Shown here: positions 10,512-47,154 of the stretch, piece by piece
Layout: the number at the start of each line of letters is the position of its first letter
Numbering within the stretch: the stretch's first letter is position 1
IMG/VR virus record: IMGVR_UViG_3300045135_002615
Location: 62,001 to 126,000 of that record
DNA length: 64,000 bases
Direction: 5' to 3' (one strand)
The notes under the pieces: model-generated
What the model was told of the DNA's origin: nothing
Databases searched by the model: none
What the model saw: only the letters and a program-made list of their open reading frames with translations
Program-made: the position numbers and the translations under genes

Positions 10512-10547
10512 CACCTCGTCTGTGTATATTGTCTCACAGACGAGGTG
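10512..10547 (-). promoter_or_regulatory. Perfect 13-bp hairpin covering the SD of the baseplate operon's first gene
   Basis: CACCTCGTCTGTG (10512-10524) / CACAGACGAGGTG (10535-10547). Confidence 0.7.
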
Positions 10548-10552
10548 TGTCT

Positions 10553-10565
10553 ATAAAGGGATTAT
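10553..10565 (-). promoter_or_regulatory. Late-promoter motif ATA-ATCCC-TTTAT
   Basis: 44 nt upstream of ATG 10509, head of the baseplate operon. Confidence 0.65.
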
Positions 10566-14524: not shown

Positions 14525-14583
14525 GTGTACTCCTTCTATGTCTGTACCATGTGTAAACAAGAAGATAAAAGGAGTACAACATT

Positions 14584-16681: not shown

Positions 16682-19285
16682 ATGAACTTCTTAGACGCAT
16701 TGACACAAGTCAATCGACCCAACATCAGCCCTAAGCCTTGGATGGCAGAGTGCGAGCTTATTTTCGGAACAAGAGACAACCTCGACAAGTGCATTGACGA
16801 GTGTATCAACTCTCCTACAGGCTTCTATGGTCTTGACACCGAGACTACAGGTCTTGACACGCGAGTATTCAACGGAAAGACAAGAGACACCATCGTGGGC
16901 ATCTGTCTCGCCCCGACCAAAGACAAGGGCTACTACTTCCCTGTCGCCCATAAAGAGGGAGTAGAGCACAACATTCCATGGAGGATCATGGGTCCTGCCC
17001 TTGAGCGTCTGTTTGATGTGTCTGTTAAGGCTATCCCTATCTTCCACAACAGCTCTTTTGATATGGAGGTGTTGGAGTTCAACGGATTCACCAAGCAACG
17101 TCTAGGTGAGAAGCGTTGGGACTCTCAGGCAGGGTGGCACGACACCTATATCTTGCAGTATCTCCTCAACCCTCGTGAGAAGGGCGGGCGTGGTCTTAAG
17201 CACTTGACGAACGTCCACCTCAAGAGGGAGATGATCGAGCTCTATGAGTTGTTTGGCATGGATAAGAAGGGTAGTAACTTGAACTACTCTCAACTAGACC
17301 CCTCATGGGAGCCTTGTGTGTGGTACGCCGCGAGTGATGCCATGTGTACGCTTGGGCTCTTTGAGATCCTCTATGCCGAGTATACAAGTAAGCCTGAGCA
17401 TACCAACTTCATCTATGCGTTGGAGAAGTCCTGTGCTTCCGCTACGCGGTGGATGCACCGCAACAGGGTCTACATTGATAGGGACACCGCCCTGAGCTAT
17501 GCCCAATCGGGTCAGAAGCTGTGGTTTGACTCTCTCGTAGAGGTCTACGAGGGTGCGTCAGAGATCCTTGGGCGTAATATTATGCCCAACTATGTACGCA
17601 TCTTGAAGGGAGAGCTGAAGGGTATGAACCGCTTCAATCCCGATGAGGTCGAGGGTATGAGCTACAAGGTACGCCTCGATGAAGCTCGTAAAGAGGCATT
17701 ACGCTTACACCCTGACCCTACAGAGGTGCTCACTAAGTCTGTCCCATACATTGACCGAGATGCAGGTACGGAGAGTGTTGAGTTCCCCTTAGTCTATGAC
17801 ATCATGTCACCACAGCAGTTCGGTCTGCTTTTGAGAGAGTTGGGTGTACCTGGCTTGAAGGCATCTGAGAAGTCGGGTCAAGTGGTCACGTCTAAAGATG
17901 TGATTGAAGTCGTGATCAAAGAGGCGAGTGAGACTTTCCCCTTCATGAAGAAGGTTAAGACCTTCCGTGAGCTAGGTAAGGCTATGGGTCAATACCTCAT
18001 CCCCTTCGTGGAGGATGTGGGTCCCGATGGGACACTCAAGCCCAAGTTTGATCAGTTCGCTGCCGATACGGGTCGCTTCTCATGTAAGACAAACAGCAAG
18101 CCTTGGAAGGTGCTTGATGGTGGCTGTCGTGTACCCTTTCAAGGTATTCCTGCGACCTATGATCCTAACAAGCCCGAAGCTATCGCCAAGATGCGTAAGT
18201 GTGTAGCTGTTAGAAACCCTGACTATTGGCTCGCGGCGATTGACTACGCAGGTGTAGAGTTAAGGCTCGTCACCAACTTGAGCGGTGAACCTCTATGGGA
18301 AGATGCCTTCTTCCGTTGTTCGGAGTGTGGTAAGGATTACCCTAAAGACATTCAAGAGGATGGATTTGCGGAAGCCCCTCCTGCGATCTGCTCATGTGGG
18401 TCGGATAAGATCGGTGATCTCCACACGATCACGGCGGTAGCCTTTTATGGAGAGGGAGCTAAGAAGCAAGACGATTGGAAGAAGCTCCGTGGTAACGGCA
18501 AGTCCTGTAACTTTGCTCTCTCTTATGGAGGTACGGGCAAGGCGGTACAGAGGTCTATTAAGGGTTGCTCAGCAGAGGAGGGTGAGGAGAAGTACAAGCT
18601 CTTTACCAAGACGTACAAGACGTTGACTGCGTGGTGGGCTCAGCAACACGCTTTTGGGCGTAAGCATGGTTTTGTAAAGACGGGCTTAGGTAGGGTTCAG
18701 CCCCTCCCTGACATCAACAACAAGAAGGAGTTTGGTCTCCGTTCTAAAGATGAGCGTAAGGCAGTTAATGGACCTGTACAGGGTACGAGTGCCGACATTA
18801 CTAAGCTCGCCATGAGTCTGATCTACAAAGCGGTCAAGGAGCGTGGTTGGGAAAACAAGCTCATGATGATCTTGACGGTACACGATGAGATTGTGTTTGA
18901 GATTCACAAGGACATCTTGAAGGAGGGTATTGAGCTACTCTGTGAGTTGATGACCCGTAATGAGGCGGTCAAGCGTATGAAGTGGCCTGTACCTTTGCTC
19001 GTAGACGTAGAGCTAGGTAAGGATTGGACAGTCCCTTACGACCTCAAAGAGATCAGAGAGGGCGAGGGGGATCCTGAGCTAGTCAAAATCTTTGGTGGTG
19101 TAAAGCCTTCGGAGAAGCCTGTTGAGGAGGAAGCTCCTAAGCAGGAGAAGCCGAAGGTGGACACACTTGAGATTGACGAGTTGACTGCGGATAGTGCGGT
19201 CAAGGTGGCGATGTGGGTTAGGGAGAGAGAGGGAGAGTGGGACGTGATCTATAGTGGGAGATCAGTCAAGGCACTACTCGTTTAA
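16682..19285 (+). CDS. polA: DNA polymerase family A with 3'-5' exonuclease (Phe762 type)
   Basis: ExoI DTETTG, ExoII HNSSFD, ExoIII YAASDA; motif A DYAGVELR; motif B RGNGKSCNFALSYG; motif C TVHDEIVFE. Confidence 0.97.
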   Translation: MNFLDALTQVNRPNISPKPWMAECELIFGTRDNLDKCIDECINSPTGFYGLDTETTGLDTRVFNGKTRDTIVGICLAPTKDKGYYFPVAHKEGVEHNIPWRIMGPALERLFDVSVKAIPIFHNSSFDMEVLEFNGFTKQRLGEKRWDSQAGWHDTYILQYLLNPREKGGRGLKHLTNVHLKREMIELYELFGMDKKGSNLNYSQLDPSWEPCVWYAASDAMCTLGLFEILYAEYTSKPEHTNFIYALEKSCASATRWMHRNRVYIDRDTALSYAQSGQKLWFDSLVEVYEGASEILGRNIMPNYVRILKGELKGMNRFNPDEVEGMSYKVRLDEARKEALRLHPDPTEVLTKSVPYIDRDAGTESVEFPLVYDIMSPQQFGLLLRELGVPGLKASEKSGQVVTSKDVIEVVIKEASETFPFMKKVKTFRELGKAMGQYLIPFVEDVGPDGTLKPKFDQFAADTGRFSCKTNSKPWKVLDGGCRVPFQGIPATYDPNKPEAIAKMRKCVAVRNPDYWLAAIDYAGVELRLVTNLSGEPLWEDAFFRCSECGKDYPKDIQEDGFAEAPPAICSCGSDKIGDLHTITAVAFYGEGAKKQDDWKKLRGNGKSCNFALSYGGTGKAVQRSIKGCSAEEGEEKYKLFTKTYKTLTAWWAQQHAFGRKHGFVKTGLGRVQPLPDINNKKEFGLRSKDERKAVNGPVQGTSADITKLAMSLIYKAVKERGWENKLMMILTVHDEIVFEIHKDILKEGIELLCELMTRNEAVKRMKWPVPLLVDVELGKDWTVPYDLKEIREGEGDPELVKIFGGVKPSEKPVEEEAPKQEKPKVDTLEIDELTADSAVKVAMWVREREGEWDVIYSGRSVKALLV

Positions 19286-22961: not shown

Positions 22962-24422
22962 ATGGCAAGAACTGACTCCGAGAAAAGAGACATCTACAAG
23001 AAGTGGCATGAGCTGATCAACATGAGTGAAACGGCTCTTAAGTCATGGGCAGAAGATGATGACAGGCTTCTTGCGTCTATCAATAGGCAAGAGGCAAAGT
23101 CTGAAGGGGGTATCCAATCGGGCTATGATTCCTTCCATCGCATAAAAAGGCGTAAAAAAAAGCCTTTTAAGGAATGGTCGGACTCGGATTTCGATAATGC
23201 TAATCAAGAGATAGGCTTCAACTCACGGATGCTAGGAGGCACCCCTGGGAAACCTGTGTCCAATTCAGGGCGATCTAAATGGGAGATCAGTCTTAGGAAT
23301 TGGGGACACGATCCTTCGTTGAAGTCAAGCCCCGCACATAATAAATGGAAGTCATGGAAGAAGAAGCAAGAGGAAACCAACATGAAGAAGTCACACCAAG
23401 TCCGCGTCCTGAAGAGGGCGATTATAGCCACGAGAAACCGCCCTGACCTAGCCCCACAGAGGGAGGAGTACATCCGCCTTTTGAAAGCTCATAATAGCAG
23501 GGTAGCTTCGGGTGACCCTAATAAAGAGTTAGAGAAGCCAGCTAAGAAGCTTGGTTTGTCTAGGAAAGATATGTACGAGGCATGGCTTCCACTTTTAAAA
23601 AAAGTATCGGGTCTTATCAAGCCTGAGTATCAGGTTCAGATTTCCAAGTTCATTTCGAGTTATGGTCTTTTGGGATTCTTCAATGGGCTCTACAAGGACA
23701 CCATGAAGGGTACAATCAAGCCCTCAAATCCCGTTGAAAAATTCCTTGCCTCGATCTTCAAAGGCTTGAGTATCTCAAAGACCGCCGAGATGACCATCCG
23801 TGTCCTCCAAGCGGAGTCCTTGGATGATATTGCCGAGGTCGGTAGAGCACAAGGTCGGGATATGTTGGGAGAGTGGGGTCTAGGAGACGCTAAACTCAAA
23901 AAGCGTATGTATGAGAATAAAGTGGGACGTAACGTCACTTGGGAGGAGTTCGCTGAACAAGTCGAAGATAAAAGGTTGTACACCATGTTGGTGAAGTATC
24001 TAACCTATATTGAGGATTCTAAAATCTTTGGGGTTAAGCTCTTGTTCACCATTGTCAAAGGTGCAGGTGTTGCTTGGTTATTAGGAGGCACTCTCGCAGG
24101 GATTACTTTCGGCGTGGTTGCATTCCTTAAGTTCATTTTTGCTTTGGCGGTGTGCTTCGGTTGGCGTAATGCAGCTCAGTTTCTTCGTAAGACAGGGATT
24201 ATGCTCACCGCACTCGCCCCTTCAGTGCTCATAGACCTTGGGAGGGTCTTAGGACTCCCGTTTGATATATTCCATGGCATTGTAAACAAAGTGAGTCAAG
24301 CCACAGATGCCGTCGTTAACTTCTTCTCGAAGAAGGCGGTACAAGAAATCCGTATGCTACTTAGAGAGGACATGGACTTCCGCAGGGAGTTCTTGATCAC
24401 TCAAAAACGCAGACACATCTAA
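22962..24422 (+). CDS. DUF3140-like domain fused to a helical/membrane protein
   Basis: INMS..AL.SW ... SKWEISLRNWGHDP; hydrophobic C-terminal segments; possible internal start at 23382. Confidence 0.7.
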   Translation: MARTDSEKRDIYKKWHELINMSETALKSWAEDDDRLLASINRQEAKSEGGIQSGYDSFHRIKRRKKKPFKEWSDSDFDNANQEIGFNSRMLGGTPGKPVSNSGRSKWEISLRNWGHDPSLKSSPAHNKWKSWKKKQEETNMKKSHQVRVLKRAIIATRNRPDLAPQREEYIRLLKAHNSRVASGDPNKELEKPAKKLGLSRKDMYEAWLPLLKKVSGLIKPEYQVQISKFISSYGLLGFFNGLYKDTMKGTIKPSNPVEKFLASIFKGLSISKTAEMTIRVLQAESLDDIAEVGRAQGRDMLGEWGLGDAKLKKRMYENKVGRNVTWEEFAEQVEDKRLYTMLVKYLTYIEDSKIFGVKLLFTIVKGAGVAWLLGGTLAGITFGVVAFLKFIFALAVCFGWRNAAQFLRKTGIMLTALAPSVLIDLGRVLGLPFDIFHGIVNKVSQATDAVVNFFSKKAVQEIRMLLREDMDFRREFLITQKRRHI

Positions 24423-24440
24423 TAATCTTTTAATAAGAGC

Positions 24441-24471
24441 ACCCCTCTCGGAGCACCAATCTGAGAGGGGT
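24441..24471 (+). promoter_or_regulatory. 9-bp hairpin covering the SD of the Ntn-hydrolase gene
   Basis: ACCCCTCTC / GAGAGGGGT. Confidence 0.65.
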
Positions 24472-25879: not shown

Positions 25880-26388
25880 TACAACTCCTCGCTAAGTTGT
25901 TAGGGATTAGAGAGGTCATCGTACCTTCTCCCATCTTCCACCACCATGTAGATGAGCCCCGTAAGTCAGGTCATACATTCTCAACCACCATTGAAGATAC
26001 ATACATGGAGTGGGACGTTGAGACCCTGTGGACACATAGCGAGAGCCTACCTGTTACCCAATGGGAGATACCCGACAGCTTCCTTGAAGAATGGAACTGG
26101 GGGTCAGATCACCCTTCTGAGCATATTGAGAGATGTCTTGAAGCCGACCTCTGTTATCCCATTCTCGTATGGGATGGGATCATCGTAGATGGCTGCCACC
26201 GAGCGGTCAAGTCTATTGCTCTAGGGTTTTCAACGATACCTTGTAAGGTCATTAACACCATGCCTCCCACCAATCACGACATCCATCCCCATGAGGAAGA
26301 GGAAAGCACGGGTAAGTGGACCCACGATGACATGGTTAAGATTTTAAGGGTTGTCTTAGATCAAACCCTCACCCCAAAAGATAAGTAG
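25876..26388 (+). CDS. ParB/sulfiredoxin-like domain protein
   Basis: EADLCYPILV..GIIVDGCHRAVKS; ATGA overlap with the upstream gene. Confidence 0.7.
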   Translation: MIQLLAKLLGIREVIVPSPIFHHHVDEPRKSGHTFSTTIEDTYMEWDVETLWTHSESLPVTQWEIPDSFLEEWNWGSDHPSEHIERCLEADLCYPILVWDGIIVDGCHRAVKSIALGFSTIPCKVINTMPPTNHDIHPHEEEESTGKWTHDDMVKILRVVLDQTLTPKDK

Positions 26389-26748
26389 GGGTTTGTCCCC
26401 CTTGCGGGAGATGCGGTACTCTGAGACATTGTGGATGGTGAAGCTAACCTTCCCGGACTTGTCTTTTAGAACCACTCCCTCCAAGAGAGTCAACTCACCT
26501 TCAATCAAGTAGGCTTTCTCTACCTCAACCTTGATTGAGGTGATGACCCTGTGTCTATCTCGATTGAAGGTAATTAGGTAAGTTGTATCCTTGGTTGTGA
26601 CCATATCCAAGAGTACCTCAACTTGACCGCCTTTACGGGTTAAGGTAGCCCCTTTGATCTGATTATAAGAAGGATCGAGGCAGCCCTCTACAGGGCTTGC
26701 CATACAAGGTGTGTTAAGCACCATCAACATTAAAAGAGCTCTGATCAT
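26356..26748 (-). CDS. Secreted/exported hypothetical protein
   Basis: Signal-peptide-like MIRALLMLMVLNTPCMAS; GGAG SD; ATGA overlap with the Myb gene. Confidence 0.6.
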   Translation of the reverse strand: MIRALLMLMVLNTPCMASPVEGCLDPSYNQIKGATLTRKGGQVEVLLDMVTTKDTTYLITFNRDRHRVITSIKVEVEKAYLIEGELTLLEGVVLKDKSGKVSFTIHNVSEYRISRKGDKPLLIFWGEGLI

Positions 26749-27350
26749 TGTGTTAGTCTCCAATACATTTTCTGCACGGTTGATTTTTTACGATTTAACT
26801 TTTCTGAGATGTCCTTCCAAGACAACCCATCTTCCTTCATCTTGAGGAGTTCATCTTTCTCCTCATCTGTCCACTTCTTTGTCTTTGTCTTTGTCTCAAG
26901 CATCAGGTCGTAAGCCTTTTTCCTACAAGCAGTAGCGGTCTTACCTAATGCTTCACCGATGTCTGACCAACTCAAGCCATCTTCAATGAGTGCCTCTAGT
27001 TGTTCTACCTGCTCATCTTTCCAACCTCTAGGGTTTAAGGTGAGCCCTAGTCTTGAGGCTTTGCTCTTAACAGCGGAATGTGTCTTACCTAGCTTGTTAG
27101 CAATACGCACTCCGCTCATACACCACCTTCGGCTTCGCAAGTAGGCAAGTTCTTCATCAGTCCATGTATTGCTTCGGTCAACTACAATGAAATCCCGTTC
27201 TTCTCTCAAACGGATGCCGAGCTTCAGGAGCCGACCTTTAACGGAATATTCGGAACGGTTGAGCCTCTCTGCGAGTTCTTTAGTAGTGCAAAAAGAAGCC
27301 ATCGTTTTGAGGATCAAGTCCTCTTCTTTCGTCCATCTTTTGTAGGTCAT
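26745..27350 (-). CDS. Protein with four Myb/SANT-like HTH repeats
   Basis: WTKEED, WTDEEL, WKDEQV, WTDEEK repeats, each followed by IA/LA..L.R/K(S/T). Confidence 0.85.
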   Translation of the reverse strand: MTYKRWTKEEDLILKTMASFCTTKELAERLNRSEYSVKGRLLKLGIRLREERDFIVVDRSNTWTDEELAYLRSRRWCMSGVRIANKLGKTHSAVKSKASRLGLTLNPRGWKDEQVEQLEALIEDGLSWSDIGEALGKTATACRKKAYDLMLETKTKTKKWTDEEKDELLKMKEDGLSWKDISEKLNRKKSTVQKMYWRLTQ

Positions 27351-27393
27351 ATAAGTGCCTCTCTAATCAGTATGTTATAGAGGCACTTATATG
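27348..27393 (-). promoter_or_regulatory. Perfect 15-bp inverted repeat covering the SD and start codon of the Myb gene
   Basis: CATATAAGTGCCTCT (27348-27362) / AGAGGCACTTATATG (27379-27393), 16-nt loop. Confidence 0.75.
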
Positions 27394-27395
27394 TT

Positions 27396-28064
27396 TCAGT
27401 GCATACTACCCCTGAGCATCTTGAGCACCTTGACTATTTTTGACACATCTGCCGCACGGAACGAACTCTCTAACTCATTATACTTTGTACGCAAGGGTTT
27501 GCGAGCCTTCTTAATGAGTCCATCAATCGTCTTGATCGCGGGCTGTGATCTACGGTCTTTGAATTCGAGGAGGAAAGACCTCAGAGCTTCAAGGGGGCGA
27601 GGGTCAAGTTCAAGCCCTGCCTGGGTAAGACCAACCATAGGCTGTATACGATCAATCCAGTAGTCAAGCTCTTTAGCTTTGAAGAGTGTCCTATCACCCT
27701 TAAAGGCTTTTGGGTTCGTGTCTATGGGATACTTTCCATAGAGCACCTGACCTCCTCTATGAGGTCCTCTTTTACTGAAGATTGAGAAGTACCCTTGATG
27801 CACACGCTCTTTGATCTCCTCATGAAGAAACTGCATCGCTTCACTCTCTGTGTAGAACCGATGTGACTTCTTAACAGACATGCTGGGTGAAGATTCTAAG
27901 ACTTGTATCTCGTTGCCCTTGACCACAGCCTCATATTTCCTCCACTTCTTATGGGGGAAGAACAAGGCTACTGCGATTTGGTCTTTCAAGAGGTCGCCCT
28001 CATGATAAACCTTAGTGCCCTTTGGCATCTTCAAAGTGGGGGTTTCAAACGCTCTCTTTAACAT
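27396..28064 (-). CDS. Basic protein with possible WGR-like segment
   Basis: F.TESEAMQFLHEEIKERVHQGY resembles the WGR C-terminal helix; late motif at 28104-28116. Confidence 0.5.
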   Translation of the reverse strand: MLKRAFETPTLKMPKGTKVYHEGDLLKDQIAVALFFPHKKWRKYEAVVKGNEIQVLESSPSMSVKKSHRFYTESEAMQFLHEEIKERVHQGYFSIFSKRGPHRGGQVLYGKYPIDTNPKAFKGDRTLFKAKELDYWIDRIQPMVGLTQAGLELDPRPLEALRSFLLEFKDRRSQPAIKTIDGLIKKARKPLRTKYNELESSFRAADVSKIVKVLKMLRGSMH

Positions 28065-28103
28065 GACATCACACCTTTATCAATCGTTGGTGATAGAGCA
28101 ACG

Positions 28104-28116
28104 ATAAATCATCTAT
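28104..28116 (-). promoter_or_regulatory. Late-promoter motif ATA-GATGA-TTTAT
   Basis: 40 nt upstream of ATG 28064. Confidence 0.65.
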
Positions 28117-29003
28117 CAGAGAGCCGTGAACTCCTCCTCACCTGTAGGGGCATCGTCCAAGAGACACTGATAAAGGGTCGTCGGAGGTCTGATCCCCTTA
28201 TGACTATTGAAGTCAGGCACGAACACCCCATCTCTTTCAAGGGGGTTGTAGTACTCTAAGTCTATGTTCGTAACGATGTGGCTCAAGTGATTAGAATCAA
28301 GCATGATTGAAGGATCAAAGTCCTCAAGAACCAAAACCGAACCTGAGAGAGCATTGACTAGTAGCTCGTCCCTCTCTCGGATAAGTTGCTCTCTCAAGTC
28401 ACAGAGCTTCAGTATCCTCGCTTCAAGGTTATTCCTCAAGTGGCTGATCTCTTGAGCAAAGACCTTCTTTACCTTGCGTATCTGACCACCGATCTGATCA
28501 GCTTCTGGGAAGATGTTGGCTTCATTAGAACCGAGCTTACGAGGAGGGTATTTCCATAAGGGCAACCACCCACTCGTATCAACACCTTCAAACTCATCAT
28601 TAGACTCAGGGTACACAACCCCCCCATAAGGCTGTGTCTCTAAAACCCTGAACTCCCCTACTCTCCTCGTGTCATCATCAAAACGACCTTCTGTAAGGTC
28701 TTCGATGAAACGAAATGAGTCAGGGTGGAGGAACATAGAGATGTCAAAGGGGTTACCTCCTTGTGCAATATACGCACGCATGAGCTTCCCTAGTGATGTG
28801 TTAGGATCAACGACAAATCCGTCCCTTGCCTCGGTGCAGGAGTCCCCCTCCACCTTGTAGGCAATAGACACATTACCTATACGAGCAAGTTCAGCGTTAA
28901 TCAACGCAACCCTTGAAGGAGTGTTCTGTCTCTGTAGAAGAACGAACCTTCTAAACTCTAACCATGACCCATGACGAAACATACAAGTCCATCCGAAGCT
29001 CAT
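28116..29003 (-). CDS. Putative virion structural protein, 295 aa
   Basis: Last gene of the tightly coupled 28-41 kb operon; AGGAG SD. Confidence 0.65.
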   Translation of the reverse strand: MSFGWTCMFRHGSWLEFRRFVLLQRQNTPSRVALINAELARIGNVSIAYKVEGDSCTEARDGFVVDPNTSLGKLMRAYIAQGGNPFDISMFLHPDSFRFIEDLTEGRFDDDTRRVGEFRVLETQPYGGVVYPESNDEFEGVDTSGWLPLWKYPPRKLGSNEANIFPEADQIGGQIRKVKKVFAQEISHLRNNLEARILKLCDLREQLIRERDELLVNALSGSVLVLEDFDPSIMLDSNHLSHIVTNIDLEYYNPLERDGVFVPDFNSHKGIRPPTTLYQCLLDDAPTGEEEFTAL

Positions 29004-29004
29004 A

Positions 29005-31428
29005 TCAATCTCCTAACAAGGCTTTGAAGAGGTCTATCAGCGTGGTCGGTAAACCTCCCGCAACAACCATCGCTCCTGTGCCGTACCCGTTGTTGATAGG
29101 GGGCTTGTTCTGAGCTCCCATGATAGAGGTTACAAGACCTGCCGTACCATCTGAGATATGGTAAGTGGCGTAGATCCCTTCAGGGAGTCTGAAGTTTAAA
29201 ATGGCATCTATGATAGCTTTGATCTTAGCTATAAACTGCTGTAGTTGAGCGAGGCGTACTTGAAGCCTTTGTATGAACTTAACGACCTCACCCACAATCG
29301 TGTCTAAGCCTGCTACCAAACCCTTCAAGAACAACTTAGTCTCATCCATGAAGCTCAAAAACCCTGCAAGGTCAGTCTCGTAGAAGGGTCGGTAGTTAAT
29401 CCAATCACCTCTGTTCTCCTCACTGACCCCGACAGCAAGTATGCCAAAGCCATTGGTGATTACATCTGCTATGCCTGGTAGATCAAGAACAACTTTCTGT
29501 ACGGCATTGTCGGTAAGCACAAGGCGGAGATATGGGCTCTCATAGTACAGCCCACTACTAATGAACTTGCGAGAATTAGGCAGCCCGTAATCCTGCTGTT
29601 GATCCTCCCATGTGAAGCCGTTGTCCCGCCCATGAGAGAAGCTATAGATGACACCCTCATAATGAACCCCGCCCGAGGTTCCCGTCTTGAAGTATCCGTC
29701 TGCGTCATCTCCCTCTTTTGTCTTCTCAAGTATCTCATAGAGGTTGTACCTATAGTCGTTGATAGCCTCCACCATTGAAGATACACTCGAAAGTGATGAA
29801 GGTGTGGTGGTGTTGAACACCGCTTTGTCTACTAAATAAATAACCCTACTTGCGAAGCTCTCCCTTGAGAGATCAGCTCTAGCATAGAGATATTTACCAC
29901 ACTCCATGTACCCACTAAATCCCATCTTGTTGTAGATTGAGGCGATGTCACTACCATAGTCTGCAAACTCACCTAAAAGTTTATTATTCGCAGCGGTGTC
30001 CCCTACACGACACAACAAGAACGCAGCATAGAAGTTCCTCAGTGCCTTGTAGTACTCATTGAGTCTATTAGTAGGGAAGGTGAAGGTTGTCTCCCCAGAC
30101 CCTAAAGTCAACCCCTTGACTTTAGTCTTGACTTCGGGAACTACATCTATCGTGTATTCAACTAAGCCCTTAGTATTCAGCACCCTCTGCATACCATGTT
30201 GAGTAGTCGTATAGACGGCATCTTGTTCCGCTTCGAGACCATAGATGTTGACATAATATGAGTCTTGGAGGACACCTCCCACTTTTAATGCCTCTGATGG
30301 GATCTCCATACGGAACTCTGAGTCATCTGTGAAGGAGGCTAAGAGTGAAGAGTTGTCATACAAGAAGGTTCGGTAAACCTCCGATACATCTTGACCCTCT
30401 ATCTTGGAGGTGTATATATCATTGTCCCCATAGACCAATAGAGGGGAGTCATTGAAGTCAGGGGTAGGTGTCAAGTCCTTCATCAACCCCTTCTCGACAC
30501 TACCTGAAGATGGCGAGTACTTTGTATCTGAGTCTAACATCACGCTGTATAGATGAGCAGGTACGGGATCAGGGGTTGAGAGTATCTTAGGCTCTATTAC
30601 TTGAGGTTTTCCATACTCGTCATACTCAGCAGGTGTCGATGCCCTTAACACTCCTACACCTAGCTTTTCGTTCCTACTCCTAGATGACACACAAACCAAG
30701 AAGTAAGGTGGTGCAAGGCTCTCACGCAATCTTGTAGGCACACTTGAAGAAGGGGAGGAGCACTTCCATCGCACTACAACCCCATCCGCCTCTTGACCTG
30801 GCAGTCTTGGGTTTGCGGGCGTGGTCACCCCGCCAATCTTGCGGTAGTAGCCTATAGTCACTTGTGTGGGAGGTGGCGTTGAAGGTTGACTATCTTCACC
30901 TAAGAACACCTTCAAGAGCTTTTTGATGGGGAGGATGACATCCTTATAGATACGAGCGACCCCATCTGTACCCACACCCGCAAAGAAGTTCAACGCAAAA
31001 ACCTTCGTATTCTGTGTGAACGCAGGTCTTGTAGGGTCTTGCCTATTTGTCAACCTCTTGATCGCCCTCTGCTCGTATGCGGGGTAGCCCCCTTTTAAGA
31101 GTTGGAGAGGATCTCTCAGTTGCTCTCTATCGTAAGTGAAGTAAAACCCCGCGTTCCTGAAGTCCTCAATCAAGGAGTCCAAGAACGAGATGATTGCTTG
31201 AACAACCACTTTTAACGGGTCAGCTACGTCTAACAAGAAAGAAGACATCAAGTCGAGCACGCCATTGACCAACCTGAAGGTCAAGTTCAACGCTTCAAAG
31301 AAAGCGTCACTACTCTGCTTCGCAGAGATGAGTGCGTCATAGATCTCATTCTCTGCGGGGATGCCAACATGACCCCATGAGTCTCTTGATGGAGACAGAC
31401 TCCCATCTCTTGGATTAGGCTCAGCCAT
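29005..31428 (-). CDS. Putative baseplate/tail structural protein, 807 aa
   Basis: Long ORF in the operon with the giant acidic protein; helical termini, beta-rich middle. Confidence 0.65.
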   Translation of the reverse strand: MAEPNPRDGSLSPSRDSWGHVGIPAENEIYDALISAKQSSDAFFEALNLTFRLVNGVLDLMSSFLLDVADPLKVVVQAIISFLDSLIEDFRNAGFYFTYDREQLRDPLQLLKGGYPAYEQRAIKRLTNRQDPTRPAFTQNTKVFALNFFAGVGTDGVARIYKDVILPIKKLLKVFLGEDSQPSTPPPTQVTIGYYRKIGGVTTPANPRLPGQEADGVVVRWKCSSPSSSVPTRLRESLAPPYFLVCVSSRSRNEKLGVGVLRASTPAEYDEYGKPQVIEPKILSTPDPVPAHLYSVMLDSDTKYSPSSGSVEKGLMKDLTPTPDFNDSPLLVYGDNDIYTSKIEGQDVSEVYRTFLYDNSSLLASFTDDSEFRMEIPSEALKVGGVLQDSYYVNIYGLEAEQDAVYTTTQHGMQRVLNTKGLVEYTIDVVPEVKTKVKGLTLGSGETTFTFPTNRLNEYYKALRNFYAAFLLCRVGDTAANNKLLGEFADYGSDIASIYNKMGFSGYMECGKYLYARADLSRESFASRVIYLVDKAVFNTTTPSSLSSVSSMVEAINDYRYNLYEILEKTKEGDDADGYFKTGTSGGVHYEGVIYSFSHGRDNGFTWEDQQQDYGLPNSRKFISSGLYYESPYLRLVLTDNAVQKVVLDLPGIADVITNGFGILAVGVSEENRGDWINYRPFYETDLAGFLSFMDETKLFLKGLVAGLDTIVGEVVKFIQRLQVRLAQLQQFIAKIKAIIDAILNFRLPEGIYATYHISDGTAGLVTSIMGAQNKPPINNGYGTGAMVVAGGLPTTLIDLFKALLGD

Positions 31429-31621
31429 TGGGGTCTACCTTCCTGTTGGCTTGTTGCTCTTTGAGCTGTGTCTGAACTCTCTCAAGGGCATGTATCTGAG
31501 ACTGAACTTGACGAGCTTCCTTCTCATAGTAGTCCTTGAGAGCAATCAAGTTGCTCACAAAGTCCCCTAGCTGAGTACCCTCAAGGTTTGGTCTCTCTGA
31601 CTCACTCTTCCAATCACTCAT
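31421..31621 (-). CDS. Small coiled-coil protein
   Basis: Overlaps neighbours at both ends; heptad pattern. Confidence 0.6.
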   Translation of the reverse strand: MSDWKSESERPNLEGTQLGDFVSNLIALKDYYEKEARQVQSQIHALERVQTQLKEQQANRKVDPNG

Positions 31622-34600
31622 ATGATGTCCTCCAACGCTGTTAGGTCAGGGTTTTGATAGTCGATCCTATCCATGCGAGGTAAAGTACCTGTCACTCGGT
31701 TCGTCCTCGTATTAATCCATGCATACCTCTTACTCCTCATACCCATAGAAGAGATACCATTCCCTATGAGCGTAACCATACCCTCAAAGAGTGTATGCCC
31801 TTGAGCCTCAAGCTGAGGGTCTTCAACAAGTAGCCTACGATCCGTTAAAGACAGCATTGTGTCCGTGTAAGGGTACGGAGGCTCATGCGGCGTCAAAACC
31901 CCAAAAATCAGGTCATTAGATGGGTGTGTGGGGTCGTTCTCACCTACAAGGTAAATAGAGTCTGTCTGCTCATACGCAGCCCATGTCAAAGGTAGAGGCA
32001 CAAGTTGATTAAACAGCCTTACCCTCTCAGACCATGACAATACTCTCTCCCTGAAAAACAACACAACCTCCGCTAAGTTTCGATCAAGCAAGTCTCTCCT
32101 CTTAAGGATGCGATAAGAGAAGGGCTCTATGCTGTCTGAGCTTGTAGTGTATGTCCCATTGTCGATAGGAGAAGTCACCCTCAAAGGGTTCGAGGTGTCC
32201 CCATCTACAGAAGGTAGGAATATCTCATGTGGGTTTGAACTACCTGAGATAAACTCAACCGTCAAAGATGACCCGTCAACACTAATGACCCTATAGGATC
32301 CCCTGTTGTCATCTAAGGTGTTCGGCTGACCCACACCTAATGGTCCATCGCCTTGTGCAGGAGCACCCCTCTCTAATGGGGCACCCTCAAGAGCTCCTTG
32401 AGGGTCTATCACGAGATAATAATCTGAAGGTGTACCCGTGATTAGCTCAGAGAAGTCTACACTAGTGTCTTCAAGAGTATTCTCCGTAGGCACACGAGCT
32501 GTGGAACTATAGATGAGATCAAAACCATGCTCAAGGAACTCGTTGAAGCTCTGCTCTTGGGGGATCAAGTGTGTTCTTGTAGTCACCTTGAAAGATACCA
32601 TGTCACCATTAGGGTCACCCGATAATGAGATGCCTTTAGCTGAACCTGGTGTAGCCTCAACAATCTTCATCTTGAAGACCTCATCACTTGAGCTGTCGTA
32701 CATAGTGATGTAGTCACCAACCTTCAAGGCTTCATCAAAGTCACCCACTTGAGTGTCCTTGCCCCCTAGTGCCTCTACACCAAAGACATCAACCTTCTTA
32801 GAGGTGAGTGTATAGACGCCATCTGTGAAACTAAGATGGTCAACCAAACCTACCTTCTGCTCATAGAGGTTTTTGAGACCAAGTAGTGAGTTCAACATCT
32901 CAAGCATGATGCGAGAGAACCTCCTGAGCCTACGCACCTTGATCGTACTCACCTCTGTGAATGTCCAAGCAGGTAAGTTACCTAACCCAACTTCATCAGC
33001 AAGTGATCTTACTTGAGAAGTCCCATCATTAAACACCTTTGGTGTCGTACCCCTATAGTCTCTCATTAAGCGAGGGAATGCTCGATCAAGATGGATCGCT
33101 GCTTCCGCCGTGATGGTCAGAGTAAAGCTATCATTAGGCGTTAAGAACCCTTGCCCATAGGTGTTCCCTTGAGGCGTGTCTTCTATCGTAGGGAAGATAG
33201 ACTCCCATGAACCGCCTACTAAATTAGATGGGAGTAAGAGAGCTCTCATGATGCCCTCCTCATCCCTCTCAATATAACTCTCATCTACCGTGACGGATAC
33301 GGACAAACCACCCGCTAAGGTGAGGTCAATGGTTAATGGACTAGCTAATGAAGTTGGGACTTCATAAGGGAGCAAGCCTGTAGCCAAGAAGTTAAAAGGA
33401 ACCTTGTGGATGCCACAAACGACTTGACCACCTGACCCAATAACACTGTTCATCTGTTGGTAGGTGAGCTCCTCTACCTGGTTAGAGTCTACGTTGCCAT
33501 AAGTGGGGTTCTCAGTGCCATTGGCGGATGAGAAGGTGAACGTCATCGAACCGCCATTGATCGAGTCATACTTCAAGCGGATGTAAGACCGATAGAACAC
33601 TTCATCGAAGCTATTGTTCTGTGTAGACGCAGGCTGAGTCAGGTAGTTGTCATTCAAGAGGATGATGGCTTCCATCAAGCCCGACCCATTGTAGTAAAGA
33701 CTCAAGTCGCTGCTGTCTGTCACAAGCGTACCTGTACCATCACCATTATCGAGTACCTCCACTACAGTGGGGAACACTACAGGCAAGATATCGCTAGAAC
33801 CAATCTGCTCTGTGTATGTGGCACTTAACGCTGAAGGGGTTATCCTCTTGACTCGATGAACACCCGCGTTGTGACCTCGCTCAATATAGACCAAGTCACC
33901 CTCTTCAACATTAGCTAATGAACCTTCAAAAGACACAAGGTTCGTCAACTCAGCCGGGGCGGAGTCTGTTGTACCTGTTGGGTCAATCCTGCCATATTCA
34001 CCTGAACCAATGAAGATGACCTCTCCATCTCGAACCTCAGCACCTACAAACAAAGACATAGGATCGTTGGTTCGCTCAATGTCAAAGAGACTCCTTACCC
34101 TCAAGGTGTTGGCGTCAATCACATCCCATGCCTCACCTAGTCGAATATGAGAGTATCCGAAACGACTAAAGGCGTTAGCATAAGACTCAATAAGCTGTGT
34201 TCCTATGCCCCCATACTGCCATACGTTCATTAGTGACCCGTAGACATAGAATAGTGGTGTCACATCTAATGGGGCGACACCACCTCCCGCTGCCAATAAC
34301 ACAGAGGGGTCGGTGTCTGATTGTATCCATGTTGTGAAATCAGCATCTGCATCATAGAAGCTCAACCTGTCCGAGAGGACATACGAGTTAGTATTCAACC
34401 CGAACCTCATGTCGATGCGATAGTTCAAGAAGAAGTCAATAGAGAGCGTCCTCGTGTTTACCCCAATATCCGCAGTCACATCGAGGTCGATGAGGTCTGT
34501 CCATAACGTGTTAGTGATCCATGTCTCATAACCATTAAAAGGCCACTGAGGTTCCTCAGCTAAGGTCAACACATTAGGGATAGGTTGTTGGAGTACGCCA

Positions 34601-37600
34601 ATCGAGGTGGCGGAATAAGACACCGTCAAAATGTTAGTCGCAACCTCAACCACACCCGTAGGTGAAGTCGTTGAGACAATCCATGACGCCCCGTCATACC
34701 TGAACGTGATCTTGTAATGGAACTCATAAGTGGTTGGGGCATACACATGAAGGATGAACGTGCCATTAGTGTTGAACACCTTGTCCATGATGTCCCCTAC
34801 GGGAAAGCCATTACTGAACTCAAACTCCACCAACGACTGATCCCATTCAGAAGTAGCCACGTTGAAGATGAGCGTCTCTTGGAACGTCACACCCGACCCT
34901 AGACCCGAAGGCAACATGTGTACTTGAGCGTTCAAAACCTCATATGAAGCACCATCACTCGGTGTCTCAAAGAAAGGTGGACTCAACTGAGCCCCATCTA
35001 TAGACATGAGCTCCATGATGCCCGTTGCCCCACTACCATCTACCCCACTGTCATCTGGACGAAGTAGAATCAAGTCCCCCTGTCTAGGGGTCTGTTCAAT
35101 GAAGCCATTAAGGTTAGAGAAATCCTCAGATGTCACAAGATGACCACCCGTGATCTGTGTCAGATCATCACGAACCTCATCTGGGTACTCGTACTCTAGC
35201 TCACCTGAATACAAGTTCAACGTCTGTGCTGACCCCGCTTCAAAGTTGGGTTGTATCCCCTCTAATACCTCACGCTCCCCTAGCGTATTCAAGTAAGGGA
35301 GATCATGGTCTCCTGCGTCACATACATCAAGACCCTTGAGAGCAGGATACTCAAAAGGAGAGGTGTTCGTATTGTTGAACGTCACAATACCCTGTAGGGG
35401 AGCATACGCTTCCGGTACGTTCTGACCCGTCAGCTCTTGAAGGGGCCAACTTGGTTCACTCAAGCTCGGTAATGAGATGTCATAAAGCTCCCCCGTTGCT
35501 GTGTTCAACCCTACATCAACTCCGATGCGGAACGTAGAAGGTTGAGCATCAGACTCATCAAGGTCTGCTCTGTAGGAAAGAGCAAGTGTATCCCCCCTCT
35601 TGGGTACATATGTGTAAAGGTCATCCCCGTTGATCGAATACGAGGAAGGCACTCCATTAAGCACCACAAGACACCCTTGATATATCGCACCCACCCTAGC
35701 TGTCTTATATGCTGAAGCACCATCGTAAACAGCCAACTCCGCCTTGTTCAAAAGATCATGGAATACACCATCCACGCTGATCTTCAGCTTATCACCGACA
35801 CTCAACCCTCCAAAAACATGACTAGGGTCACCCGTCAATACATCAGGCGTATCTCCACCGTAAGTGATGAACTGAGAGACATCAGGATAACCTGTAGTAG
35901 AGTCTATCGGAAAGCTCTGTAGTTCCACCGCAGATAAAATGAACGTAGGCTTACCCGCTGACAATGGCTCAAAGTCCGCAAAGCCATCTCGTGAGTAGTT
36001 TACAATCCTGAATCGAGCGGGGCGGCGGGCTAACGTAAGTGAGGTGATGTCTGTAATCCGACCTTGTGCGTCATTCCCAACAAGGGCGATCACGCTGCCA
36101 TTAGTCGTTGAGTCTAAGTCACCTGGTACTCGGTAGGTGTAGTACTCTGTCCGCTCATTAAACAAGCGACTATAAATACTAGGCTCTGAAGCCCTCGCCC
36201 AACGAGCAACATAAGGGGAGACAGGCACTCCCGTAGTGAAGTCAAACACCCTAGACCTGTCCCAACCTACCATCAAGTAGTCGTCTATCTCGTTCTCCAC
36301 CAATGAACCCTGATCTTCCATCAAGGCTGTAAGCTCTCTCACATCATTGACCGACATGGGATCACTAGGCAACATATACCCTTGCTCTAAAGCACGAGCC
36401 GCCAACACTACATAACGAGGATACACCTCCATCGTTAATGGATCCTCAAAACCCGCTCCTCCCCAATCACCTGCTATCGGAAGCTCAAACTTGAACTGAC
36501 CATCATAGTCCCCAACCAAGCTCCCTGTTGCTGTTGAAAGCACACTATCTAAAGGTCTCAAGTACCCGTCATACTCCCGTATGCGATCTCTCGCCACAAA
36601 GTCATCCGCCAACAAGTCATACAGACCAAGCCCCACCCCCTTAAAGGTCTGTTCCGTAGCTACGCTCTTACCACTCGTAGTCCTTGACCTCAAAGACTCC
36701 GCCTTCAAGCGACTCGCCACAATAGACCCATATACACCCTTGTCCATAATCGTCACTTGGAACGTGTCCGGTGACTCAACTACACAACCTGCCGTCACGG
36801 GCAACCCCGTATAATCCGTAGGTACCCTCCTCTCCGTATAGCTCACACTATATCTAGGATAACTGACACGACCCCCCGCCACTTGAATAGGACTCAATAC
36901 ACCCCTTGCTGTGTGAAGGAAGTAATACTGATCACCTCCTACTACACCATCTACCAGCTCAACCTCACCCTCCCTTAACTCATAGTCACGACCCTCGATG
37001 AGTAGCGTAGCTACCCCTCCACGGTACCTAAGCAACTTGTAATCAATACCCACCACAGAGGTCGATAGGCTCAAGACCTTGTCTCCCTCAAAATAAGACG
37101 CCCTCAAGCTCACCAATAGACGAGTACCCGATGAGGTGTATGAGTGTGCCCTCACCTGACCCTCTGCAACCAAGATCGTCACACCCTCCTCTACCCTGAC
37201 CGTAGACACCCTGTAACACACACCATCCGTGATCACTAATGAGCCCGATCCCATTAACGGACTCAAGTCACCACTCAATCTCAACTCCGTACCCCGTGCT
37301 ACCGACTCTACACGCACCCCCTCAACCTGTCTAAATGATGAACGGAGCTCATACCCGTCATACACTACAACAGGTACGTTCAGCACATCAAAGCTCTCTG
37401 CCTCTAATGAACTCAGCGGCGTTGGACTCAAACCAACTTCACTCGCAGTAACGGAAGTCACAAAGAACTTTGAGAACCCTATAGAGATCAAATCACCCAC
37501 TGACACTCTGTCTCTCACGTCTACAGGACAAGTCATCGTTGACACACCACTCGACAACGAGAACTTCGGAACCTCAACTCCCGAAGACAACCTCAACACA

Positions 37601-46014: not shown

Positions 46015-47154
46015 TCACATGTCAATGGGGGTAGGGGCGTCAACACTCTGCTCGTTGACAACGTCTGAGCTGAGGTAGGTGTCGATAGCACCCTGTAAGG
46101 CATCACGGTTGTGGTCCTCCATGAGGTGACCAACCACGCTCTCAAAGGTGTCCTTGAGAGCGTGGTTGAAGGTGTCTGCAAGACCCTCTGCGAGCCAATC
46201 AAGTGCGAGGCGACCCCACATCTTTGCTTGACGCAGCGTGACCTCGATACCCATGCGATCCTCGTGGCTTACACGGCGAACCGCACGAATACAATCAGAG
46301 AGGGTTTGCACCTCAAGCTCTGTGAGGACAGGGAAGGCAGCGGCGATCACCTTCTTCTCAAACGCTTGGGTGTGAGGTGGGACCATCACCGCTGAGAGGC
46401 GTGAAAGGAAGCTCGCATCCTTCGGGCGGGTGATGTTGCCACGACCCCCATCCCCATCAGCACCTGAATTGGAGGTGAGGATAACGCGAGTACCCTTGAG
46501 GACAGGGAACATCTTACCCGTCACAGGGTGGGCGATCTTCTCCTTGTCAAGCTCAGTCGTTTGGCGGAGGAACTCGACCTGCTCAGGGGTGGCTCGGTCA
46601 TAATCACTAAAGAGGATGATTGAGGGGACGGTGATCTTGAGAAGCCCCTTGTCGTCAAGCCTCTCCACCTTGTAGTTCTCCTCCTCCATCTGCTTGATGA
46701 GATCCTCACGAACCTCACTCTCAAGAGAGGAGAGATCACGCACACAGCTCACACCGCGTGTCGCACGGAGGAGATCACCATCAGTGACCTTCGTCACCGA
46801 AGCTCCGCGAACCTCAACGAGCTCAACACGAGCAAGGTAGTCAGCAGGGTTGACGCCCACCTTGAAGGCGAAGCGGGCGAGGGGGCGGTTGGTGGCATGG
46901 GCGAGGGCATCTGTCCACACCTCCTTACCCGTGCCCGCCGTGCCGTTCACTACGAGGTGGCTCTTCTTCTGAAAGAATGTGGCGAGGCGGAGAGGGTTCT
47001 TGCTTGTGGAGGTGTCCTCCACATAGTCATCAGCTCGCTCGCCTGGTAGGTAGCCTGCGTCGATGATCTCCTGCTCGGTGAGAGGGGATACGACTCGCTT
47101 GATGCCGAAGAACGACACCGTCTGAAGTTTATTAAAGTTAGGTGCTGAACGCAT
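46015..47154 (-). CDS. MoxR/CobS-like AAA+ ATPase with non-canonical Walker motifs
   Basis: GTAGTGKE; ILFSDYDRA; sensor-1 LTSNS; D.SFLSRL arginine finger; partner vWA genes adjacent. Confidence 0.8.
   Translation of the reverse strand: MRSAPNFNKLQTVSFFGIKRVVSPLTEQEIIDAGYLPGERADDYVEDTSTSKNPLRLATFFQKKSHLVVNGTAGTGKEVWTDALAHATNRPLARFAFKVGVNPADYLARVELVEVRGASVTKVTDGDLLRATRGVSCVRDLSSLESEVREDLIKQMEEENYKVERLDDKGLLKITVPSIILFSDYDRATPEQVEFLRQTTELDKEKIAHPVTGKMFPVLKGTRVILTSNSGADGDGGRGNITRPKDASFLSRLSAVMVPPHTQAFEKKVIAAAFPVLTELEVQTLSDCIRAVRRVSHEDRMGIEVTLRQAKMWGRLALDWLAEGLADTFNHALKDTFESVVGHLMEDHNRDALQGAIDTYLSSDVVNEQSVDAPTPIDM

What the first reader, a model, noticed from the sequence alone, without database searches (positions are those of the whole stretch)
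27348..27393. 15-bp perfect inverted repeat burying both SD and AUG of a four-Myb-repeat regulator
Seen: on the minus-strand mRNA the 3' arm is AGAGGCACTTATATG (SD plus start). A TATAAC hexamer lies at the 5' arm/loop junction. Established: T4 silences some late genes on early read-through transcripts with RBS hairpins that late promoters inside the stem avoid. Inference: the same timing logic applies here, or the palindrome is an operator for autoregulation by the tandem Myb protein.
Basis: partly seen in the sequence, partly recalled or inferred. Interest (0 to 1): 0.6.

Follow-up and report, generated by a model that had tools for sequence, protein, structure and literature searches.

The report
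Promoter-embedded hairpin hiding a regulator's start
A very stable RNA hairpin hides the ribosome-binding site and start codon of a phage DNA-binding regulator, a promoter-like box sits inside the hairpin's first arm, and the same design recurs at dozens of genes in this ~300-kb uncultivated phage and its relatives, so translation is probably licensed by where the transcript starts, as in a few phage T4 genes.

Summary
On the minus strand, 27393-27379 pairs perfectly with 27362-27348: 15 bp, or 19 bp with one mismatch. The hairpin fills the 45-nt spacer between a 222-aa ORF and a 201-aa gene with four Myb/HTH repeats, and buries the SD, the spacer and the AUG.

It is not an isolated oddity.
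- In this 296.6-kb phage, 20 of 306 genes have stems of 9 bp or more between the RBS and upstream sequence, against about 1 expected.
- The 5' arm usually begins inside a promoter-like box. The box is TTTAT of a late-type motif, ATAGnnCnTTTAT, or TATAA, which is found at replication genes.
- Two related genomes (~54% aa identity where measured) show the same enrichment.

Five orthologous leaders of this gene (100-33% protein identity) all fold into an RBS-occluding hairpin.
- CATATAA in the 5' arm is invariant in the four closest.
- One relative shows 5 of 15 compensatory pair changes.
- No operator-like features were found.

Best reading (confidence 0.55): T4 gene e/soc/I-TevI logic. Transcripts entering from upstream are silent for this gene. 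Transcripts starting after the TATAAG box lack the 5' arm and are translatable. The timing is probably reversed relative to T4, with an early/middle promoter inside a late operon. No transcript ends could be mapped.

The parts
27379..27393 (-). 5' arm of the RNA hairpin (CATATAAGTGCCTCT). With the imperfect extension it runs 27375-27393.
27386..27391 (-). TATAAG, a -10-like box inside the 5' arm. CATATAA is invariant in four orthologous leaders. The predicted start of its transcripts, about 27377-27380, would exclude the 5' arm.
27374..27379 (-). It is present but not conserved in relatives.
27367..27374 (-). 8-nt terminal loop (CAUACUGA). It varies among relatives.
27348..27362 (-). 3' arm, AGAGGCACTTATATG. 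It holds the SD core, the 7-nt spacer and the ATG (27350-27348). The full SD, GAGAGG, is 27358-27363.
26745..27350 (-). Gene for a 201-aa protein with four Myb/HTH repeats (P0001), whose translation start is occluded.
26356..26748 (-). 130-aa ORF (P0003) whose ATG overlaps the Myb gene's stop (ATGA). It is probably translationally coupled to the Myb gene and so under the same gate. It is the last gene of the leftward unit and is convergent with + strand genes.
27396..28064 (-). Upstream 222-aa ORF (P0002). It matches no family but has normal codon usage and is conserved in L184 and L185. Its stop, TGA 27398-27396, lies 2 nt before the stem.
28104..28118 (-). Late-type (class A) promoter-like motif TGATAGATGATTTAT, 44 nt upstream of P0002's ATG. 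It overlaps the stop of the 295-aa gene and is conserved in L184 and L185. It is a likely source of the read-through transcripts.

Best explanation
The inverted repeat acts as an RNA stem-loop, not as a DNA site.

On any mRNA that enters from upstream, the stem pairs the whole SD-spacer-AUG of the Myb-repeat gene. Such mRNAs would come from the late-type promoter in front of P0002 or from the long virion-gene unit above it. Ribosomes then cannot start there, nor at the overlapping downstream P0003 gene.

A conserved -10-like box, TATAAG, lies inside the 5' arm. RNA polymerase starting about 7 nt downstream of it makes an mRNA that lacks the 5' arm and has an open ribosome-binding site. Translation of the regulator is therefore licensed by which promoter made the transcript. 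This is the logic known for T4 genes e, soc, 49 and I-TevI.

TATAA boxes in this phage precede replication genes and the upstream promoter is of the virion-gene class. The likely outcome is that the regulator is made early or in mid-infection and is shut off translationally when late transcription reads through it.

Shown: the structure, its stability, its conservation with compensatory changes, the conserved box, and the genome-wide recurrence of the design. Inferred: promoter activity, the start sites, the temporal classes and the translational block.
For: Structure and occlusion: the fold is -27 kcal/mol with z = -4.4. The RBS unpaired probability is 0.08 in the read-through form. It rises to 0.59 or 0.61 if the RNA starts after TATAAG or after TATAAC.

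Conservation at this gene: orthologous leaders at 90, 82, 45 and 33% protein identity all fold into a hairpin (-17 to -22 kcal/mol). Each has a TATAA box in the 5' arm and the SD in the 3' arm. All open up (unpaired 0.58-0.89) when truncated 13 nt after the start of the box. CATATAA is invariant in four of them, while the 3'-arm complement tolerates a mismatch or a 2-nt deletion. Window versus L186 shows 5 of 15 pairs changed on both sides and kept.

Genome-wide design:
- Stems of 9 bp or more between the RBS and upstream sequence occur in 20 of 306 genes, against 1.1 expected from shuffles.
- Within the late-promoter class the count is 14, against 0.85 when upstream regions are swapped between genes.
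- 17 of 65 late-class genes have RBS unpaired below 0.2, against 9 of 242 others. None do if the RNA starts 12 nt after the box.
- The box usually overlaps the first bases of the 5' arm, with a modal offset of -2.
- TATAA-in-5'-arm hairpins recur at five other genes.

Relatives: G001 shows 13 against 1.9 expected and G002 shows 8 against 0.8. Seven orthologous gene pairs carry hairpins with unrelated stem sequences.

Promoter classes: TATAA boxes peak 25-45 nt upstream of ATGs and precede DNA polymerase, helicases, clamp loader and SbcCD genes. The ATAGnnCnTTTAT motif precedes baseplate and other virion-type genes.

T4 precedent: PMC3014915. My metric recovers T4 soc, 49 and e.
Against: TATAAG has no recognisable -35. 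A strict sigma-70 scan finds nothing here, although TATAA boxes in this genome generally lack a -35. The RNA polymerase or sigma factor that reads either promoter class is unknown. Temporal classes are inferred from gene functions only. If the polymerase starts upstream of the stem, the hairpin would be present on every transcript. Among TATAA-class genes only 2-3 have perfect stems of 8 bp or more, so the strongest statistics come from the other promoter class. The Myb-like gene in G002 has a TATAAC box but no strong hairpin.
Confidence: 0.55

Rival explanations
1. Constitutive throttle with translational coupling. All Myb mRNA carries the hairpin. It keeps the regulator's synthesis low and ties it to translation of P0002, because ribosomes terminating at the TGA 2 nt before the stem melt its outer half and free the AUG.
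For: The stop codon 27398-27396 lies 2 nt from the stem, and the same geometry is kept in L184 and L185. Regulators are often made in small amounts. No internal start site has been shown.
Against: A terminating ribosome would open only about 7-9 outer pairs, leaving the GC-rich inner stem on the SD. In L186 the upstream stop is 13 nt from the stem, in L006 it is about 25 nt away, and the upstream gene differs, yet the hairpin and box persist. At late-class cassettes the stop lies 7-10 nt before the stem, too far for melting. Coupling does not explain why CATATAA is invariant while its pairing partner drifts.
Confidence: 0.15
2. An RNA 3'-end, processing or insulation element. The stem-loop ends or stabilises the upstream P0002 message, by factor-dependent termination, as a 3' exonuclease block, or as an RNase III-type cut site. 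Occlusion of the next RBS is secondary.
For: The stem is stable, immediately follows a stop codon and fills the spacer. The 19-bp duplex is near the lower size limit for RNase III substrates (general knowledge).
Against: No U-tract follows the stem, so it is not an intrinsic terminator. The relatives' stems are 11-17 bp with bulges, which are poor RNase III substrates. Genome-wide, the 3' arms coincide with SD/AUG (arm ends at -8 to +3), and gene-specific complementarity targets the RBS. The genome has ordinary GC-stem plus T-run terminators elsewhere.
Confidence: 0.1
3. A DNA operator. The palindrome is bound by the Myb-repeat protein, or by another dimer, to autoregulate transcription. The TATAAG box on each strand makes it a repressible or bidirectional promoter.
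For: It is a perfect palindrome directly upstream of a DNA-binding protein gene, and the TATAAG box appears on both strands by symmetry. A palindrome is present at the orthologue in L006.
Against: There are no further copies. Every other GAGGCACT lies inside coding sequence and the 15-mer is unique. The half-sites are unequally conserved and their spacing ranges from 5 to 28 nt among orthologues. Compensatory changes preserve pairing rather than sequence. Dozens of unrelated genes carry equivalent hairpins with unrelated stem sequences. A single chain of four tandem HTH repeats is not expected to need a two-fold symmetric site (general knowledge). 34 Myb-family genes in other phages lack such structures.
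Confidence: 0.07

Closest known systems
Phage T4 gene e (lysozyme) leader, and likewise soc, 49 and I-TevI (Uzan & Miller review, PMC3014915)
   Same: A stem-loop pairs the SD and AUG. Promoter boxes lie in the DNA that encodes the 5' strand and the loop; T4 e has two TATAAATA boxes, this locus has TATAAG and TATAAC. Longer transcripts from upstream are predicted to be silent and promoter-proximal transcripts open. My metric scores T4 e, 49 and soc as occluded.
   Different: In T4 the embedded promoter is late and the silent transcripts are early. Here the embedded box belongs to the replication-gene class and the upstream promoter to the virion-gene class, so the timing is probably inverted. 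T4 uses the device at a handful of genes: 2 of 159 genes in its first 100 kb have stems of 9 bp or more. This phage uses it at 20 of 306 genes. Nothing here has been tested experimentally.
Homing-endonuclease gene control in T4-like phages (I-TevI; Aeh1 mobE, cited in PMC3014915 and PMC2988022)
   Same: An RBS-sequestering hairpin keeps a DNA-binding protein's synthesis off on read-through transcripts within a foreign transcription unit.
   Different: Those genes are mobile endonucleases expressed late. This gene is a four-repeat HTH regulator conserved within its phage clade.
Translational operator hairpins of RNA phages (MS2/PP7 replicase start bound by coat protein)
   Same: A hairpin contains the start codon of the regulated gene.
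   Different: Those hairpins are short, with conserved loop and bulge nucleotides recognised by a protein. Here the loop varies among close relatives and the stems differ from gene to gene.
Translational coupling through intercistronic secondary structure (e.g. MS2 coat to replicase or lysis, and many bacterial operons)
   Same: The structure sits between cistrons and occludes the downstream RBS. The upstream stop codon lies next to the stem at this locus.
   Different: The stop-to-stem distance is not conserved among orthologues, and a conserved promoter-like box sits in the 5' arm.

Membership tests
T4-type promoter-embedded RBS-sequestering hairpin (e / soc / 49 / I-TevI) | A stable stem-loop that pairs the SD and/or the AUG of the regulated gene | tested here: met
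   15-bp perfect stem (19 bp with one mismatch), -27 kcal/mol, z = -4.4, RBS unpaired probability 0.08. It is conserved in four orthologues, with 5 of 15 compensatory pairs against L186.
T4-type promoter-embedded RBS-sequestering hairpin (e / soc / 49 / I-TevI) | A promoter within the DNA encoding the 5' strand, so that its transcripts lack that strand | tested here: inconclusive
   TATAAG lies in the 5' arm. CATATAA is invariant in four orthologues at -34 to -41 from the ATG, inside the genome-wide positional peak of TATAA boxes. No -35 is present and no start site was mapped.
T4-type promoter-embedded RBS-sequestering hairpin (e / soc / 49 / I-TevI) | Longer transcripts of another temporal class read through from upstream | tested here: inconclusive
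   A late-type motif lies 44 nt upstream of P0002 and no terminator-like site lies between it and the hairpin. Class timing is inferred from gene functions.
T4-type promoter-embedded RBS-sequestering hairpin (e / soc / 49 / I-TevI) | Translation is repressed on long transcripts and active on short ones | not testable with these tools
   This needs reporter, toeprint or ribosome-profiling data. Only folding predictions are available.
Palindromic DNA operator of an autoregulated HTH protein | Two equally conserved half-sites at fixed spacing, often with further copies in the genome | tested here: not met
   The 5' half is invariant while the 3' half carries a mismatch or a deletion in relatives. 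Spacing ranges from 5 to 28 nt. There are no non-coding copies elsewhere.
Protein-bound translational operator hairpin (MS2/PP7 type) | Conserved loop or bulge nucleotides | tested here: not met
   The loop and junction differ among the 90%, 82% and 45% relatives. There is no Rfam match.
Intrinsic (Rho-independent) terminator | A GC-rich stem followed directly by a U-tract | tested here: not met
   The 3' arm is followed by ACCUACAAAAG. The terminator scan does not list it.
Myb/SANT-like tandem HTH regulator (PHROG 323, 'D5-like') | Repeated W-x-x-E-E... helix-turn-helix units matching Myb/HTH profiles above cut-off | tested here: met
   There are four repeats. The protein scores 37.4 bits on PF13921 (cut-off 22.9), 31.9 on PF00249 (24.4) and 48.1 on PF07750 (26.9), and matches phrog_323 at 3.7e-38.

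The most novel reading that the evidence does not exclude
A clade of uncultivated ~300-kb phages (this genome, G001, G002 and the L186 genome) has turned the T4 'promoter inside an RBS hairpin' trick into a general rule of genome organisation. Most late promoters are fused to gene-specific RBS-sequestering stems as compact ~52-nt intercistronic cassettes. The promoter motif, ATAGnnCnTTTAT, also contains the upstream gene's stop codon. A few early/middle genes embedded in late units, including this regulator, use the mirror arrangement. Translation of dozens of genes would then be licensed by promoter choice rather than by the mere presence of the mRNA.
Probability: 0.4. Interest if true: 0.75.

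Novelty: new variant of a known kind. Interest (0 to 1): 0.58.

Why it matters
Sequestering an RBS on read-through transcripts is a textbook curiosity known from a handful of T4 genes. Here the same architecture is statistically overwhelming across a whole genome and is kept by compensatory evolution across a clade of huge phages that nobody has cultured.

If it works as predicted, transcript abundance would be a poor proxy for protein output in these phages. Gene order could then mix temporal classes freely, because translation is insulated cassette by cassette.

It would also provide a set of natural, sequence-diverse 'promoter-gated' translation switches, and a way to predict promoters and timing classes in metagenomic phage genomes from sequence alone.

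For this locus, it predicts that a four-repeat HTH regulator sitting at the end of a virion-gene unit is nonetheless an early/middle protein.

Tried and rejected
- Canonical sigma-70 scan of 26300-29300: no site found. TATAA boxes show no -35 enrichment over random positions.
- Late-class motif at the Myb gene itself: the best PWM score is only 5.5 bits, so there is none.
- Rfam, permissive search: no family matched.
- Exact 15-mer scan of IMG/VR: 12 single chance matches and no palindrome.
- The search for related loci with P0002, and with P0001 in IMG/VR and in JGI metagenomes: nothing close. The close relatives came only from the word-indexed protein search.
- blastn of the locus against GenBank phages: no match. 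The nearest polymerase is in an uncultured 485-kb phage at 48% identity.
- RNA polymerase search: no multisubunit RNAP (PF00562) and no NADFDGD-type motif. PF00940 gave nothing, but its control was silent, so that result is uninformative. Only a weak sigma-like ORF was found, with no similarity to T4 gp55.
- Giant ORFs against Pfam, PHROGs and PDB sequences: nothing.
- RNAalifold on a MAFFT alignment of the four leaders: no covariation reported, because the 3' arms were misaligned by end gaps. An AUG-anchored ungapped register was used instead.
- Mirror ORF on the + strand (27391-27663): rejected as non-coding.
- Hairpin as a trait of the Myb gene family in general: rejected. In 34 loci from other phages the median RBS unpaired probability is 0.49 and none is below 0.2.
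- Broader clade loci L005-L059: only 4 of 503 genes have stems of 9 bp or more, so the trait is confined to the nearer relatives or to other genome regions.

Full report
**Setting**

The window is bases 62001-126000 of a 296,642-bp IMG/VR virus record, 47% GC, estimated 95% complete. It has no nucleotide match in GenBank phages. Its family-A DNA polymerase is 48% identical to that of an uncultured 485-kb phage. It is an uncultivated huge phage with T4-like baseplate genes. No multisubunit RNA polymerase was detected, and there is a weak sigma-like ORF.

**The observation**

On the minus strand, the 45-nt spacer between ORF 27396-28064 and ORF 26745-27350 is entirely a stem-loop.
- ORF 27396-28064 is P0002, 222 aa. 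It matches no family but has normal codon usage.
- ORF 26745-27350 is P0001, 201 aa.
- The 5' arm is 27393-27379, CATATAAGTGCCTCT.
- The 3' arm is 27362-27348, AGAGGCACTTATATG.
- The pairing is 15 bp perfect, or 19 bp with one mismatch, with an 8-nt loop.
- The 3' arm carries the SD, a 7-nt spacer and the ATG.
- Folding gives -27.1 kcal/mol, z = -4.4.

P0001 has four W-x-x-E-E helix-turn-helix repeats. It passes the Pfam cut-offs for Myb and GcrA and matches phrog_323 at 4e-38. The next ORF, P0003, starts in an ATGA overlap with the Myb gene's stop. TATAAC is at 27379-27374.

**The hairpin is one of many**

I called 306 genes and asked, for each, for the longest perfect stem between its RBS window (-16 to +6) and the 54 nt upstream.
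- Twenty genes have stems of 9 bp or more, against 1.1 expected from dinucleotide shuffles.
- Eleven have stems of 12 bp or more, against 0 expected.
- The Myb hairpin is the second longest.

The stems differ in sequence from gene to gene, and their 3' arms end between -8 and +3 of the ATG.

**Two promoter-like motif classes**

Upstream k-mer enrichment revealed two motifs.
- Class A is ttnATAGnTCnTTTAT. About 65 genes have it, with TTTAT 32-55 nt before the ATG.
- Class B is a bare TATAA box, peaking 25-45 nt upstream, with no -35 enrichment.

Class A behaves as a promoter. It occurs back-to-back in divergent intergenic regions where no upstream gene exists. At tight junctions its TAA or TAG doubles as the upstream gene's stop codon.

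The two classes precede different kinds of genes.
- Class A precedes baseplate and other virion-type or unknown genes.
- Class B precedes DNA polymerase, two helicases, a Dda-like helicase, clamp loader, SbcCD and exonucleases.

I therefore take A as late and B as early/middle. This assignment is an inference from gene function.

**Where the hairpins sit**

- 17 of 65 class A genes have an RBS unpaired probability below 0.2 on read-through RNA, against 9 of 242 other genes.
- None of the 65 would be occluded if the RNA began 12 nt after the start of TTTAT.
- The promoter box overlaps the first bases of the 5' arm, with a modal offset of -2.
- Swapping upstream regions among class A genes removes the signal: 14 genes with stems of 9 bp or more against 0.85 expected. 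The complementarity is therefore gene-specific and not a by-product of shared motifs.
- Class A promoters that directly follow a same-strand ORF are more occluded than the others (Mann-Whitney p = 0.03).
- Hairpins with a TATAA box in the 5' arm also occur at five other genes.

**Relatives**

The neighbouring 295-aa gene led to 55 related IMG/VR loci. I fetched two whole relatives.
- G002 is 290 kb and shares 148 reciprocal best hits with this genome at a mean of 54% identity. It has 8 genes with stems of 9 bp or more, against 0.8 expected.
- G001 is 312 kb, 38% GC. It has 13 against 1.9 expected.
- Seven orthologous gene pairs between G000 and G002 carry hairpins built from unrelated stem sequences (odds ratio 4.4, p = 0.01).
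- As a control, the first 100 kb of T4 gives 2 genes against 0.8 expected. The metric recovers soc, 49, e and segB.

**This hairpin's own history**

The word-indexed protein search found P0001 relatives at 90%, 82% and 45% identity. Their contigs keep the gene and, in the two closest, the whole gene order. Together with the 33% orthologue in G001 (L006), this gives five leaders to compare. All five fold into an RBS-occluding hairpin with a TATAA box in the 5' arm. The energies are -17 to -25 kcal/mol and the RBS unpaired probability is 0.08-0.36. All five open up (0.58-0.89) when truncated 13 nt after the start of the box.

- CATATAA is invariant in four leaders. Its pairing partner carries a T-to-G mismatch in L184 and a 2-nt deletion in L185.
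- The junction box TATAAC is not conserved.
- Between the window and L186, 5 of 15 pairs changed on both sides and stayed paired.
- In L006 the anti-SD lies outside the box rather than inside it. The design there was rebuilt rather than inherited base for base.
- The upstream gene and the stop-to-stem distance differ among these loci.

**Interpretation**

The asymmetric conservation, with a fixed box and a drifting complement, argues for two things. One is an RNA structure. The other is a sequence-specific DNA element in the 5' arm. The compensatory inner-stem changes and the genome-wide recurrence with unrelated stems point the same way. [quoted passage not shown]

P0002 has its own class A motif (28118-28104), conserved in the close relatives. 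No terminator-like site lies between it and the hairpin. Late transcripts should therefore run into the Myb gene with the hairpin intact. The box in the arm is of the replication-gene class. I conclude that the regulator is probably translated from early/middle transcripts that start at about 27377-27380 and is silenced on late read-through. This is the T4 logic with the timing inverted.

**Rivals**

- Translational coupling is plausible at this locus, where the stop lies 2 nt from the stem. The geometry is not conserved, and coupling does not explain the invariant box.
- A terminator is excluded because there is no U-tract.
- An RNase III site is unlikely, given the short, bulged stems in relatives.
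- An operator is not supported. All other GAGGCACT copies lie inside coding sequence. Half-site conservation is unequal and the spacing varies. Myb-family genes elsewhere show no such structure.
- The palindrome also writes an SD and an ATG on the + strand, but that 90-aa ORF scores as non-coding.

**Limits**

No transcript ends were available. Promoter activity, start sites, temporal classes and the translational block are all inferred. If class A transcripts start at the stem base rather than inside it, the class A hairpins would be 5'-terminal structures with a different role. The conserved TATAA-in-arm design at the Myb gene would still stand.

Noticed in passing
window 28104-28118 (-); also window 10548-10565, 24420-24440 and about 60 other sites genome-wide: Promoter-like motif ttnATAGnTCnTTTAT, present in about 65 copies 32-55 nt upstream of ATGs. 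At 27 of 37 tight gene junctions the TAA or TAG inside 'TAATAG' is the upstream gene's stop codon, giving a stereotyped ~52-nt intercistronic cassette.
   Followed up: yes
window 10512-10547 (-), 24441-24471 (+), 62165-62204 (+), 14526-14578 (both strands): Other RBS-occluding hairpins in the window. They precede the baseplate-wedge gene (13 bp), a 466-aa gene (9 bp) and a 140-aa gene (12 bp, with TATAAT in the 5' arm). A fourth is a 10-bp pairing of the two SDs of a divergent gene pair.
   Followed up: partly
window 27391-27663 (+): Because the palindrome is perfect, it also writes AGAGGCACTTATATG (an SD plus an ATG) and a TATAAG box on the + strand. These head a 90-aa ORF antisense to P0002. 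Its codon score is -0.215, against 0.225 for P0002, so it is not coding. An antisense transcript remains possible.
   Followed up: yes
window 31618-40347 (-) and 897-6191 (-); G000 258473-267814 (L060:174-9515): Giant ORFs of 2909, 1764 and 3113 aa. The first two match nothing in Pfam, PHROGs or PDB sequences. The third has only an Mtd_N (major tropism determinant N-terminal) domain and carries one of the strongest promoter-plus-hairpin leaders.
   Followed up: partly
G000 241403-242029 (-) (L003:1174-1800): A 208-aa ORF with weak Sigma70_r2 similarity (E = 1e-3) and a phrog_1740 'RNA polymerase sigma factor' match (2e-6). It shows no detectable similarity to T4 gp55. It is a candidate reader of one of the two promoter classes.
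   Followed up: partly
G000 9873, 12321, 17709, 108015, 109300, 169723, 231755 (gene starts; e.g. window 46015-47300 region): A subset of TATAA boxes is preceded by a C-run about 13-16 nt upstream (...CCCCCC-N13-TTCATATAAG). This may be a third promoter flavour or terminator remnants.
   Followed up: no
G000 11063-11117 (L158): A 14-bp perfect palindrome, TCACTTGACTTATA...TATAAGTCAAGTGA, that places TTGACTTATAAG on both strands upstream of gene 10580(-). It looks like a symmetric or bidirectional promoter or a true operator, unlike the RBS hairpins.
   Followed up: no
G000 147725 and 149700 (L163): Two paralogous genes of about 315 aa, 2 kb apart, share identical promoter-plus-hairpin leaders (TAACTCCTTC/GAAGGAGTTA).
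   Followed up: no
window 26356-26748 (-): P0003 (130 aa) starts in an ATGA overlap with the Myb gene and has a hydrophobic, signal-like N-terminus (MIRALLMLMVLNTPCMASP). It matches no family and is conserved in L184 and L185.
   Followed up: no
G001 (L140: about 18770-18845): In the 312-kb relative, a sigma-70-like promoter (TTGACC-N16-TATAAG) has its -10 box inside the 5' arm of an 11-bp hairpin that pairs with the ATG region of a 424-aa gene. This is the same design as at the Myb gene, here with a recognisable -35.
   Followed up: partly
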